From the NCBI GenBank assembly GCA_054661495.1, contig BAAFSQ010000038.1:1-32000 (forward strand): DNA of 32,000 bases. Reading direction: 5' to 3'. A model generated the notes under the pieces. That model was not told the origin of the DNA. It made no database searches and saw only the letters and a list, made by a program, of their open reading frames with translations. The stretch comes from Zygophlyctis sp. KS116 (Eukaryota > Fungi > Chytridiomycota). Below are positions 12,801-14,343 of this stretch, piece after piece; the first letter of the stretch is position 1, and every line of letters begins with the position of its first letter. The position numbers and the translations under genes were made by a program.

Positions 12801-13113
12801 GCCATGAATTTAGATTCCATGCGAGTGATTCAGTCTAGAATCAAAGTATTAACCAATACCTTTCCTTCACAAGAGCTTCCAAAGTAATATGTGGCATAGA
12901 ATTTGTGGAAAAGATCTTTCTGATCCTTCTTTTCTTCCTTGGGAACTTGATCATTAAGTATTCTTACTTACTCCTCTCTAATCCATATAGAATTTGGATT
13001 TTTGCCTTGACTGAATGTTCTCCGATTGGTTTAGAGAACATTGGCAACTCATCGACCCCATCAGGACCATTAATAACCGATCGGGCTACATAATTATCGT
13101 TATCATTATCCAT
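9823..13113 (-). CDS. Multi-intron gene, probable CFAP92/DUF4550-like (C2-like folds) cilia-associated protein
   Basis: ATG 13113 (MDNDNDNY). Exons joined by 24-30 nt introns, e.g. 12946-12971; includes ORF-track pieces 12042-12692, 11375-11596 and 10288-10545. Spliced motifs MDLADLFLG, NPMCIKIQTADGMPS, KFRFFG..KVE(V/T)HDRD, PYGIAEFDLSEL, VFNYSIQT resemble CFAP92. Stop is at 9842, or at 9823 if 9842-9869 is spliced. Confidence 0.6.
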
Positions 13114-13167
13114 ATCAAATTAAAAACGTCACTCATGCGGGAAAGTGGTAGTGATCCTTTATTCAAC

Positions 13168-14239
13168 TTAAGCTACCAAAAGTTTATTGGCAGTTTTCTT
13201 CACATATTGCTTTTCAGCTGGAATACCCAAAGGCGCAGTGTTGAAAATGAGAGTGAGAGGGATTTTGGCAAATATGTGGGATACGAAGTATAAAAACTCC
13301 CCTTGTGCAAAAGAGATAAATTCAAAGCGGACCAACGCATGAACTAATGCAACTAATTTTAAGATCAATGAATTTCTTACAACCATGCCATGAATATGCA
13401 CTAATTGTTTGAGAAAGCTCCATCAACGACTCATTTACGGGACAGTCATTTTCTCCAGTAATTGCCTTCTTATACATATCCCATATCACCTGAACAGCAA
13501 TGCTATGGGTACCATAAGCTAATAAGAGCATCCATTGAGAAACTGGTCCTTTTGTAATGGATCCAATCAATCCAAAGATTGTTAAAAGCCATGAGTTCAA
13601 AACGGCTCGCTCAATCATTGGTGATTCTACTTGAGAAACAAAACCAATAATGCAAGAAAGACTTTCCATATCAAAGAACCATTCAACATATCTGCACAAA
13701 TCTACAGGGTAACCCATTTCATCTCTCAAATATGGCGTCAGTTCAAAGTAATGCATGACATAAACACCCATTACAGCGAAATTCATGAGAGTAGTGGCTT
13801 TGGTAACAGCAGCCTTTGAGGGGTTATTTGATCCTATATAGGAGAACAAACTGAATACGGTAACCAAAAAGAATGTAAAAATTCCAAGTTGGTACACTTG
13901 TGGAGCATATTCTCTTTCAAATCGGAATTTTTTGCCACTTGAAGAATATCCCAAAGCAGCAACTAATGCAGACACAGTAGACCTATTTAGTCAGAAGAAA
14001 ATGAAGTTTACCACAAGAGGAATGTGGTGACTCTGCCTTGAATAAACTTTGAGATCCCTTTCATAGCTCCAGTATTTGCTAATTGTTTAAAGTATAGATC
14101 ACTTACTATTTTCCTGCTCCCGATGTTTAGAGGTCGGACATTCACATTCATCACACTTTGATGTTATCTTTCCTGTCATAAATTCAGCACATTCACAGGA
14201 ATTGCAAGCTCCTCTAAAAACCTTTATATCGTCAATCAT
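13168..14239 (-). CDS. Microbial (type 1) rhodopsin, fungal RhGC/NeoR-like 8-TM module without an enzyme domain, 328 aa
   Basis: Exons 14239-14107, 14078-14012, 13982-13381, 13352-13168 (987 nt; introns 28/29/28 nt). Helix C GYPVDLCRYVEWFFDME; helix F SWHGFALVH; helix G HIFAKIPLTLIFN (K297). An extra TM0 (FLLWSTVSALVAALGY) follows an N-terminal Cys-rich segment. Confidence 0.9.
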
Positions 14240-14343
14240 TTTTATATAAACAAACAAAACAATGGACGTGCTTTAAATAGACATCATCAGTCCGACGTCA
14301 TGGAAGTAAAAAAGATGAATTTATTTTGATCCTATAAAGTAGG

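What the first reader, a model, noticed from the sequence alone, without database searches (positions are those of the whole stretch)
13168..14239. Cyclase-less 8-TM fungal enzyme-rhodopsin module
Seen: TM0 plus a 7-TM opsin with GYPVD..RYVEW and AK..LTL..N motifs of the RhGC/CyclOp type. The frame stops 31 codons after the retinal Lys, with no coiled-coil linker or cyclase. The next gene starts 54 bp later and is unrelated; the one plausible extra splice hits a stop within 8 codons. Established: chytrid and blastoclad rhodopsins of this type are normally fused to a guanylyl cyclase, and NeoR works as a heterodimer with RGC subunits. Inference: a sensor-only subunit that tunes or inhibits a partner RGC in trans, or signals through its N-terminus.
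Basis: partly seen in the sequence, partly recalled or inferred. Interest (0 to 1): 0.85.

Follow-up and report, generated by a model that had tools for sequence, protein, structure and literature searches.

The report
Cyclase-less rhodopsin from a chytrid fungus
This is an intact, selectively maintained gene for a light-sensor protein of the type that zoosporic fungi normally fuse to a cGMP-making enzyme, but it lacks the enzyme; similar enzyme-less forms have been published for other chytrids, so it is a new variant rather than a new kind.

Summary
On the minus strand, 14239-13168, a four-exon gene with introns of 28, 29 and 28 nt encodes a 328-aa protein. It has an N-terminal Cys/His motif, TM0 and a 7-TM microbial rhodopsin, and stops 31 codons after the retinal Lys (K297). 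The next gene starts 54 nt later.

No cyclase domain lies on this contig. The genome has two apparently complete tandem rhodopsin-guanylyl cyclases (RGCs) on another contig.

Orthologues on independent metagenome contigs (99, 87, 82, 68, 58, 55, 43 and 39% identity) keep the same short C-terminus wherever the 3' end is available. dN/dS is 0.08-0.18. It is therefore neither decaying nor a truncated assembly.

The best tree places the clade inside this lineage's RGCs: sister to a second cyclase-less clade, then to the genome's own RGC-B. An intron position is shared with RGC-B. It does not group with Chytridiales NeoR, but an AU test does not reject that grouping (p 0.127).

The retinal pocket is remodelled: E167, D171, and H293 in place of the helix-G Asp.

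Cyclase-less "NeoR-like" rhodopsins were already reported in Rhizophydiales (Broser 2023), with function unknown. The trans-acting partner idea remains untested.

The scan noted the unusual pocket before on this stretch (s1-567800) and on another piece (s1-567832).

The parts
14107..14239 (-). Exon 1: start codon and cytoplasmic N-terminus carrying the Cys/His motif C-x2-C-x-C-x13-C-x2-C-x-C-x4-H (residues 12-39, about 14206-14123)
   Evidence: the same motif and exon-1 boundary occur in own RGC-A, RGC-B, the C43 opsin, L018, L019 and L024
14079..14106 (-). Intron 1, 28 nt, GTAAGT..TTAG
   Evidence: position shared with L018, L019 and own RGC-B
14012..14078 (-). Exon 2: first part of the extra helix TM0
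   Evidence: the L018 orthologue reads through this junction without an intron
13983..14011 (-). Intron 2, 29 nt, GTAAAC..ATAG
13381..13982 (-). Exon 3: end of TM0 through TM6. Includes GYPVD and the helix-C motif R164-Y-V-E167-W168-F-F-D171 (13693-13670) and W265
   Evidence: freshwater metatranscriptome contigs at 95-99% or better lie inside this exon
13353..13380 (-). Intron 3, 28 nt, GTAAGA..TTAG, phase 1, after W-H-G
   Evidence: same position and phase in own RGC-B, L017, L019 and L024; absent in L018, which confirms the junction
13168..13352 (-). Exon 4: end of TM6, TM7 with H293 (13278-13276) and retinal Lys K297 (13266-13264), a 31-residue tail, and stop TAA 13170-13168
13111..13113 (-). 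ATG of the next, unrelated gene, 54 nt after the stop. The same neighbour follows the orthologue on L017

Best explanation
Shown: this is an intact gene for a non-enzymatic paralogue of the fungal rhodopsin-guanylyl cyclases. It has a cytoplasmic N-terminal Cys/His module, TM0 and a 7-TM opsin with the Schiff-base Lys, and it ends just after helix 7. It belongs to a conserved clade, known so far only from this genome and freshwater and other metagenome contigs. That clade most likely arose from an RGC-B-like gene by loss of the linker and cyclase, and it has since been kept under strong purifying selection with a remodelled chromophore pocket (E167, D171, M172, A269, H272, H293, P299). Inferred mechanism (about 35%): it still binds retinal via K297 but has no catalytic output of its own. 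It would act in the zoospore light-sensing apparatus as an accessory subunit. It would share the RGCs' N-terminal module, and so perhaps their targeting or binding partner, and form mixed rhodopsin-domain dimers or oligomers with RGC-A or RGC-B. That would shift or damp their light response, since a mixed dimer would leave the RGC's cyclase half-site unpaired. The identity part is about 0.9 likely; the overall confidence given reflects the weaker mechanistic part.
For: Gene model and stop. Rhodopsin family: Pfam; HMMER hits; 8-TM model and Rh-PDE as top structural match. No cyclase on the contig. Orthologues with the same short C-terminus on independent contigs: L024 82%, L017 68% (with both flanking genes syntenic), L019 58%, L018/P0005 39%. 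dN/dS is 0.076 against L024 and 0.18 against L017. Tree: the clade has 100/100 support; it is sister to a second cyclase-less clade (96/88), then to the own RGC-B clade (94/82), all inside a 21-row RGC clade (97/96). A phase-1 intron is shared with RGC-B, as are exon 1 and its Cys motif. Lys, Arg and Glu are near-invariant across all groups. Two apparently complete RGCs in the same genome could serve as partners. Exon 3 matches RNA-library contigs from three freshwater studies. Precedents: NeoR is a non-activating partner subunit, and GpNeoRh is a cyclase-less retinal binder (PMC10622942).
Against: There is no direct evidence of binding to an RGC. Broser 2023 conclude that the cyclase moiety, not the rhodopsin, sets homo- or heterodimerisation. 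The gene is not linked to the RGC pair (C38 versus C71). The C-terminal tail is poorly conserved. The L017 orthologue has lost the Cys motif, W168 (to Y), W265 (to M) and H293 (to T), so retinal binding may not be universal in the clade. No carotenoid oxygenase (RPE65 family) was found in the assembly, which may be incomplete. The RNA contigs span no splice junction and could be DNA carry-over.
Confidence: 0.5

Rival explanations
1. It is an autonomous pigment or photoreceptor that does not contact the RGCs. It could be a non-cycling, possibly red-shifted or fluorescent retinal protein like GpNeoRh, serving as a screening, antenna or reference pigment. Alternatively it could be a sensory rhodopsin that signals to an unknown transducer.
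For: GpNeoRh, also cyclase-less, binds retinal on its own, absorbs at 630 nm, fluoresces and has no photocycle. Our gene and the sister-clade gene on L026 stand alone with no RGC nearby. The counterion set E/D/H lacks the helix-G carboxylate, which predicts unusual photochemistry.
Against: No transducer candidate or conserved cytoplasmic tail is evident. Retention of the RGC-type N-terminal module suggests a shared context with the RGCs.
Confidence: 0.3
2. It is a true NeoR relative: an orthologue of the Chytridiales NeoR, or of the Rhizophydiales NeoR-like rhodopsins, that lost its cyclase. On this view it is not an independent derivative of an RGC-B-like gene.
For: Helix C has E167 and D171 at the NeoR ci1 and ci2 positions and lacks the RGC 'TCP' motif, as in NeoR. 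The AU test does not reject our clade plus the NeoR clade as one group (p 0.127, delta lnL 20).
Against: The free tree puts it with own RGC-B and the NeoRs in a separate 99/94 clade. The ci3 position is His or Thr, not Glu. It keeps the N-terminal Cys motif that the sampled NeoR-type proteins lack (P0014 and P0015 N-termini). It shares an intron with RGC-B. NeoR/RGC(a) are reported to stem from a duplication within Chytridiales.
Confidence: 0.15
3. Its function is retinal-independent. The opsin scaffold would be kept for a structural, trafficking or regulatory role in the eyespot membrane, with the chromophore dispensable.
For: L017 replaced W168, W265 and H293 yet is still under purifying selection (dN/dS 0.18). 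GhNeoRh was colourless. No RPE65-family gene was found.
Against: The Schiff-base Lys, R164 and E167 are kept in every sequence that covers them, including L017. Most orthologues keep the aromatic pocket residues.
Confidence: 0.12
4. It is a light-driven pump or light-gated channel.
For: It has three carboxylates on helix C (E167, D171, E173).
Against: It nests within sensory enzyme rhodopsins. It has no pump-type donor or acceptor pattern and no channelrhodopsin-like row of helix-B glutamates (read from the sequence).
Confidence: 0.05
5. It is an artefact or a decaying fragment: a truncated assembly, a pseudogene, or a gene whose cyclase exons lie elsewhere.
For: Nothing beyond the absence of the cyclase.
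Against: The stop lies at the same place in orthologues on independent contigs, and the same downstream gene follows on L017. dN/dS is 0.08. The sister clade is represented by an intron-free contig holding one complete ORF (L025). There is no PF00211 hit on C38.
Confidence: 0.02

Closest known systems
Fungal rhodopsin-guanylyl cyclases (RGC / CyclOp / BeGC1 type), specifically this genome's own RGC-B and its metagenomic relatives
   Same: TM0 plus a 7-TM opsin; the GYPVD..R-x-x-E-W helix-C core; the G-E..A-K..L-T-L helix-G core; the N-terminal Cys/His exon; two shared intron positions; phylogenetic nesting within the RGCs.
   Different: No coiled-coil linker and no class III cyclase. The 'TCP' motif is replaced by D-M-E. 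The helix-F Pro is Ala. The helix-G Asp is His. A Pro sits two residues after the Lys.
GpNeoRh / GhNeoRh, the cyclase-less NeoR-like rhodopsins of Rhizophydiales (Broser et al. 2023, PMC10622942)
   Same: RGC-family opsins that lack linker and cyclase; altered counterion at the helix-G position (Gln there, His here); function unknown.
   Different: Those proteins replace the aromatic triad (BR W86, W182 and Y185 become Q, N and I or V) and lie next to an RGC gene on the opposite strand. Ours keeps W168, W265 and F268 and is not near the RGC pair. Direct sequence comparison was not possible, because the sequences are not held.
Neorhodopsin (NeoR / RGC3) of Chytridiales
   Same: Glu at ci1 and Asp at ci2 on helix C; loss of the TCP motif; a non-activating role is a plausible analogy.
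   Different: NeoR has a cyclase domain and Glu at ci3, is head-to-head with RGC(a), and forms a separate clade in the best tree.
Rhodopsin phosphodiesterase (Rh-PDE) of Salpingoeca rosetta, TM domain 7cj3 / 7d7q
   Same: It is the closest solved structure and also has 8 TM helices.
   Different: About 20% identity; different effector; choanoflagellate.

Membership tests
Microbial (type-1) rhodopsin | Sequence match to Bac_rhodopsin (PF01036) above the curated cut-off | tested here: met
   Exon 3 alone: 28.1 bits against 24.6, E 1.7e-6; confirmed by the genome search
Microbial (type-1) rhodopsin | 7-TM fold with a Schiff-base Lys in helix G | tested here: met
   K297 aligns with the Lys of all RGCs. 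The AF2 model of orthologue P0005 matches rhodopsin structures
Microbial (type-1) rhodopsin | Covalent retinal binding and colour | not testable with these tools
   Needs expression with retinal
Enzyme rhodopsin / RGC (CyclOp) | Extra N-terminal helix TM0, giving a cytoplasmic N-terminus | tested here: met
   8 helices in the model; the top hit is the 8-TM Rh-PDE domain
Enzyme rhodopsin / RGC (CyclOp) | Phylogenetic position within the RGC rhodopsin domains | tested here: met
   Nested in a 97/96 clade with own RGC-A and RGC-B
Enzyme rhodopsin / RGC (CyclOp) | C-terminal coiled-coil linker and class III guanylyl cyclase domain | tested here: not met
   Stop 31 codons after the Lys; no PF00211 on the contig; the same holds in the orthologues
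Neorhodopsin (NeoR) | Counterion triad Glu (ci1), Asp (ci2), Glu (ci3) | tested here: not met
   E167 and D171 are present, but ci3 is H293 (Thr in L017)
Neorhodopsin (NeoR) | Membership of the NeoR clade | tested here: inconclusive
   The free tree separates them, but the AU test does not reject one clade (p 0.127)
Neorhodopsin (NeoR) | Own cyclase domain and head-to-head pairing with an RGC(a) gene | tested here: not met
   No cyclase; the RGCs lie on another contig
Cyclase-less NeoR-like rhodopsins (GpNeoRh / GhNeoRh) | RGC-family opsin without linker and cyclase | tested here: met
Cyclase-less NeoR-like rhodopsins (GpNeoRh / GhNeoRh) | Aromatic triad (BR W86, W182, Y185) replaced by polar or aliphatic residues | tested here: not met
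   W168, W265 and F268 are kept in the window protein. Only L017 has Y and M at the first two positions
Cyclase-less NeoR-like rhodopsins (GpNeoRh / GhNeoRh) | Direct sequence or phylogenetic relationship to GpNeoRh and GhNeoRh | not tested

The most novel reading that the evidence does not exclude
A previously undescribed and widespread (freshwater metagenomes) clade of RGC-derived opsins lost the cyclase independently of NeoR and GpNeoRh. Together with its sister clade, it would represent a dedicated trans-acting regulatory subunit of fungal rhodopsin cyclases. Its chromophore would use His instead of a carboxylate at the helix-G counterion position. That would give new photochemistry, such as a far-red, UV or non-cycling fluorescent state, and a light-dependent dominant-negative mode of cGMP control.
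Probability: 0.2. Interest if true: 0.7.

Novelty: new variant of a known kind. Interest (0 to 1): 0.5.

Why it matters
Fungal RGCs and NeoR are the zoospore's visual pigments and are also optogenetic tools. The one published pair of cyclase-less relatives (GpNeoRh and GhNeoRh) is called 'mysterious' by its authors.

This work shows that a cyclase-less RGC-type opsin is not a one-off fragment. It forms a conserved, strongly constrained clade, with a sister clade, in an uncultured chytrid lineage. It has a different pocket: the aromatic residues are kept and a His sits at the helix-G counterion position.

That provides a set of natural variants (H, T or E at ci3; W/Y and W/M at the aromatic positions). 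These could be used to test what such proteins do and how the counterion network sets colour and fluorescence. It also bears on how modular photoreceptors lose effector domains.

It does not overturn current understanding.

Tried and rejected
1. My first gene model used a 79-nt third intron (GTAAGA..CAAG). It left only 12 residues between helix F and the Lys. I replaced it with the 28-nt intron, which is confirmed by four orthologues and by the intron-less L018.

2. I laid RNA-run contigs on the locus to look for a 3' end or splice joints. Only five short contigs matched; three lie in exon 3 and none spans a junction. This suggests transcription but does not prove it.

3. An AU test was run to exclude a NeoR origin. 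It did not reject that origin, so it is reported as inconclusive.

4. I looked for names for the relatives. All close relatives are unnamed metagenome proteins.

5. I looked for the GpNeoRh and GhNeoRh sequences in the paper's supplement; none is held.

6. The N-terminal motif was searched against Pfam and the ESM Atlas. No credible family was found (best score 0.76).

7. Complex prediction was not run. The spliced 328-aa protein has no reference, exon 3 alone lacks helix 7, and the only full-length reference (P0005) is from another species.

8. The joined spliced protein was not sent to any search or fold tool. Searches used exons by reference, and folding used the orthologue P0005. Joined models were built only inside scripts from the stored files, for alignment, the tree and dN/dS.

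9. A decaying pseudogene or truncated assembly was considered and rejected (dN/dS, conserved stop, synteny).

Full report
**Observation**

The feature lies on the minus strand. Reading 14420-12900 in reverse complement and splicing in a script gives four exons: 14239-14107, 14078-14012, 13982-13381 and 13352-13168. They are separated by GT..AG introns of 28, 29 and 28 nt. The result is 987 nt and 328 codons, with TAA at 13170-13168.

My first attempt used a 79-nt third intron. That left far too few residues between helix F and the retinal Lys. The 28-nt intron restores a spacing like bacteriorhodopsin's: W265 to K297 is 32 residues, and W168 to K297 is 129.

Independent support for the model:
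- The same phase-1 intron, after W-H-[GA], occurs in the orthologues on L017, L019 and L024 and in this genome's own RGC-B.
- The 39% orthologue on L018 has no intron at sites 2 and 3 and reads straight across the predicted junctions.

- The motifs GYPVD, RYVEW and FAKIPLTLIFN are present.
- There are 31 residues after the Lys.
- There are 54 nt to the next ATG at 13113.

**It is a rhodopsin of the enzyme-rhodopsin type**

- Exon 3 alone passes Pfam Bac_rhodopsin (28.1 bits).
- Its best solved relative by sequence is the Salpingoeca Rh-PDE membrane domain.
- An exhaustive HMMER search found 48 relatives, 20 of them at E no higher than 1e-10. Those include full-length rhodopsin-cyclases of named chytrids (Obelidium, Chytridium lagenaria, Podochytrium, Irineochytrium).
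- The full-length orthologue P0005, folded with a 29-row alignment, gives a confident model (pLDDT 87.9) with eight transmembrane helices.
- Foldseek ranks the 8-TM Rh-PDE domain first (E 1.8e-9), ahead of 7-TM pumps.

The joined 328-aa protein has no reference. It was therefore not sent to any search or fold tool; exons were searched by reference and the orthologue was folded instead.

**There is no cyclase, and this is not an artefact**

PF00211 matches in the 12.7-Mb assembly lie on contigs C71, C219, C80 and C199, and none lies on C38. The ORFs downstream and upstream show no cyclase homology.

Relatives on independent contigs:

| Relative | Identity to ours | N-terminal Cys motif | Helix-G motif / ending |
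|---|---|---|---|
| P0189 | 99% | – | exon 3 only |
| P0190 | 87% | – | exon 3 only |
| L024 | 82% | present | S-H-V-F-A-K; stop 29 residues after the Lys |
| L017 | 68% | lost | stop 30 residues after the Lys; same downstream and upstream genes |
| L019 | 58% | present | stop 31 residues after the Lys |
| L018 / P0005 | 39% | present | stop 27 residues after the Lys |
| P0002, P0004 | 55%, 43% | – | exon 3 only |

dN/dS is 0.076 against L024 (dS 1.25) and 0.18 against L017. The gene is therefore under strong purifying selection.

Short contigs from three freshwater metatranscriptome studies match exon 3, two at 99% or better and one at 95-99%. None crosses a splice site, so transcription is suggested but not proven.

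**Genomic and taxonomic context**

The genome holds four opsin loci:
- Two tandem, same-strand rhodopsin-plus-cyclase genes on C71 (RGC-A and RGC-B). These agree with the earlier scan note s1-564366.
- The present gene on C38.
- A very divergent opsin on C43, which also ends right after helix G.

All four begin with the same exon. It encodes M-K/I-D..R-G-A-C-x2-C-x-C..C-x2-C-x-C-x4-H. The motif also occurs in RGCs of Obelidium, Irineochytrium, Chytriomyces sp. MP71 and Zopfochytrium, and its first half in a Chytridium lagenaria RGC. It therefore looks like a widespread, probably ancestral, RGC module rather than a special feature of this protein.

The organism is fungal. A 631-aa RPC2 fragment has Blyttiomyces sp. 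JEL0837 as its best named hit (71%). Other fungi score about 60-64%, and unnamed metagenome proteins reach up to 89%. Introns of 25-29 nt and intergenic spacers of tens of bases are typical here.

**Phylogeny**

The tree was built with IQ-TREE (LG+C20+F+G4), 49 rows and 212 columns from TM1 to TM7.
- Our six-row clade has 100/100 support.
- It is sister (96/88) to a second cyclase-less clade (P0007, P0010, P0061; Glu at the helix-G counterion).
- Together they are sister (94/82) to the own RGC-B clade.
- All of these sit inside a 97/96 clade that also holds RGC-A.
- The Chytridiales NeoR-type proteins form a separate 99/94 clade.

The simplest reading is one loss of the linker and cyclase in an RGC-B-like duplicate within this uncultured lineage. 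The shared introns and N-terminal exon fit that reading.

However, an AU test does not reject forcing our clade and the NeoR clade together (delta lnL 20, p 0.127). A NeoR relationship is therefore unlikely but not excluded.

Rows left out of the tree were redundant members, very short fragments and three long unrelated hits (listed).

**Chromophore pocket**

Residues kept in all groups: R164, E167 (BR D85), W168 (BR W86), G285, E286 and K297.

Clade-specific changes against the RGC consensus:

| Position in ours | BR equivalent / note | Change (RGC consensus to this clade) |
|---|---|---|
| 171 | T89; NeoR ci2 | T to D |
| 172 | the 'TCP' Cys | C to M |
| 269 | P186 | P to A |
| 293 | D212; NeoR ci3 | D to H |
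| 299 | two residues after the Lys | F to P |

BR W189 corresponds to H272 in ours. This agrees with the earlier notes s1-567800 and s1-567832.

L017 is the outlier. It has W168Y, W265M, H293T and no Cys motif, yet it is still constrained.

**Comparison with the literature**

Broser et al. [quoted passage not shown]
- They lie beside RGC genes on the opposite strand.
- Their aromatic triad is replaced by Gln, Asn and Ile or Val.
- GpNeoRh binds retinal (630 nm), is brightly fluorescent and has no photocycle. GhNeoRh is colourless.
- The authors call their origin and function unclear.
- They also conclude that the cyclase moiety, not the rhodopsin, decides homo- or heterodimerisation.

Galindo et al. 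2022 (PMC9616733) note unfused rhodopsin and GC1 genes in Homolaphlyctis.

The concept is therefore known. What is new here:
- a different, conserved clade plus a sister clade in another lineage;
- the aromatic pocket is kept;
- a His sits at the helix-G counterion position;
- there is no linkage to the RGC locus;
- there is quantitative evidence of selection.

**Mechanism**

Shown: an intact, constrained, non-catalytic RGC paralogue with the Schiff-base Lys.

Inferred:
- It binds retinal and works in the zoospore photoreceptor system.
- My preferred model (about 35%) is an accessory subunit that mixes with RGC-A or RGC-B through the rhodopsin domains and modulates cGMP output, probably by damping it.
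- The main rival (about 30%) is an autonomous, possibly non-cycling pigment like GpNeoRh.
- A retinal-independent role (about 12%), ion transport (about 5%) and an artefact (about 2%) are less likely.
- The question of NeoR ancestry (about 15%) is separate from the question of mechanism.

No carotenoid oxygenase was found in the assembly. cNMP-binding domains are plentiful. Neither result is decisive.

**Verdict**

This is a new variant of a known kind, of moderate interest.

Noticed in passing
window 14123-14206 (-); also L015 (RGC-A, RGC-B), L016 (C43 opsin), L018, L019, L024, P0013, P0029, P0031, P0043, P0061: A cytoplasmic N-terminal motif, C-x2-C-x-C-x12-13-C-x2-C-x-[CH]-x4-H, is encoded by a separate first exon. 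It is shared by all four opsins of this genome and by RGCs of several named chytrids (Obelidium, Irineochytrium, Chytriomyces sp. MP71, Zopfochytrium). It has no Pfam or Atlas family, and I did not find it mentioned in the RGC papers I searched. It may be a metal-binding module.
   Followed up: partly
L016 (G000:C43:44000-51000), minus strand, about 5100-3778: A second cyclase-less opsin in the same genome. My model is 423 aa, with the same Cys motif, a long N-terminal region, D-x3-K in helix G, and a stop 10 residues after the Lys. It sits on a very long branch in the tree. A protein-kinase gene (Pfam Pkinase, 1.4e-9) starts about 215 nt downstream on the same strand.
   Followed up: partly
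L015 (G000:C71:22000-31000), minus strand: Two tandem, same-strand rhodopsin-guanylyl cyclase genes (RGC-A and RGC-B). They belong to different clades, and only RGC-B shares the helix-F intron with the cyclase-less gene.
   Followed up: partly
L017 (Logan contig, syntenic 68% orthologue): This orthologue has deleted the N-terminal Cys motif and changed W168 to Y, W265 to M and H293 to T. It keeps the Lys and remains under purifying selection (dN/dS 0.18). This may be a step towards a chromophore-poor or otherwise altered function.
   Followed up: partly
P0007, P0010/P0051 (L026), P0061 (L025): A sister clade of cyclase-less opsins with Glu at the helix-G counterion position and acidic or Ala-rich tails. 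It is not present in this genome. On the 30.9-kb contig (13.2 kb fetched as L026) no cyclase-domain gene is recorded within 10 kb upstream or 2.3 kb downstream.
   Followed up: partly
window 12900-14300 and related loci: Spliceosomal introns are extremely short (25-29 nt in all models built here) and intergenic spacers are tiny (54 nt between this stop and the next ATG).
   Followed up: no
whole assembly G000: There is no match to the carotenoid oxygenase family (PF03055, RPE65) even though there are four opsin genes. The assembly may be incomplete, or retinal may come from the host or the diet.
   Followed up: no
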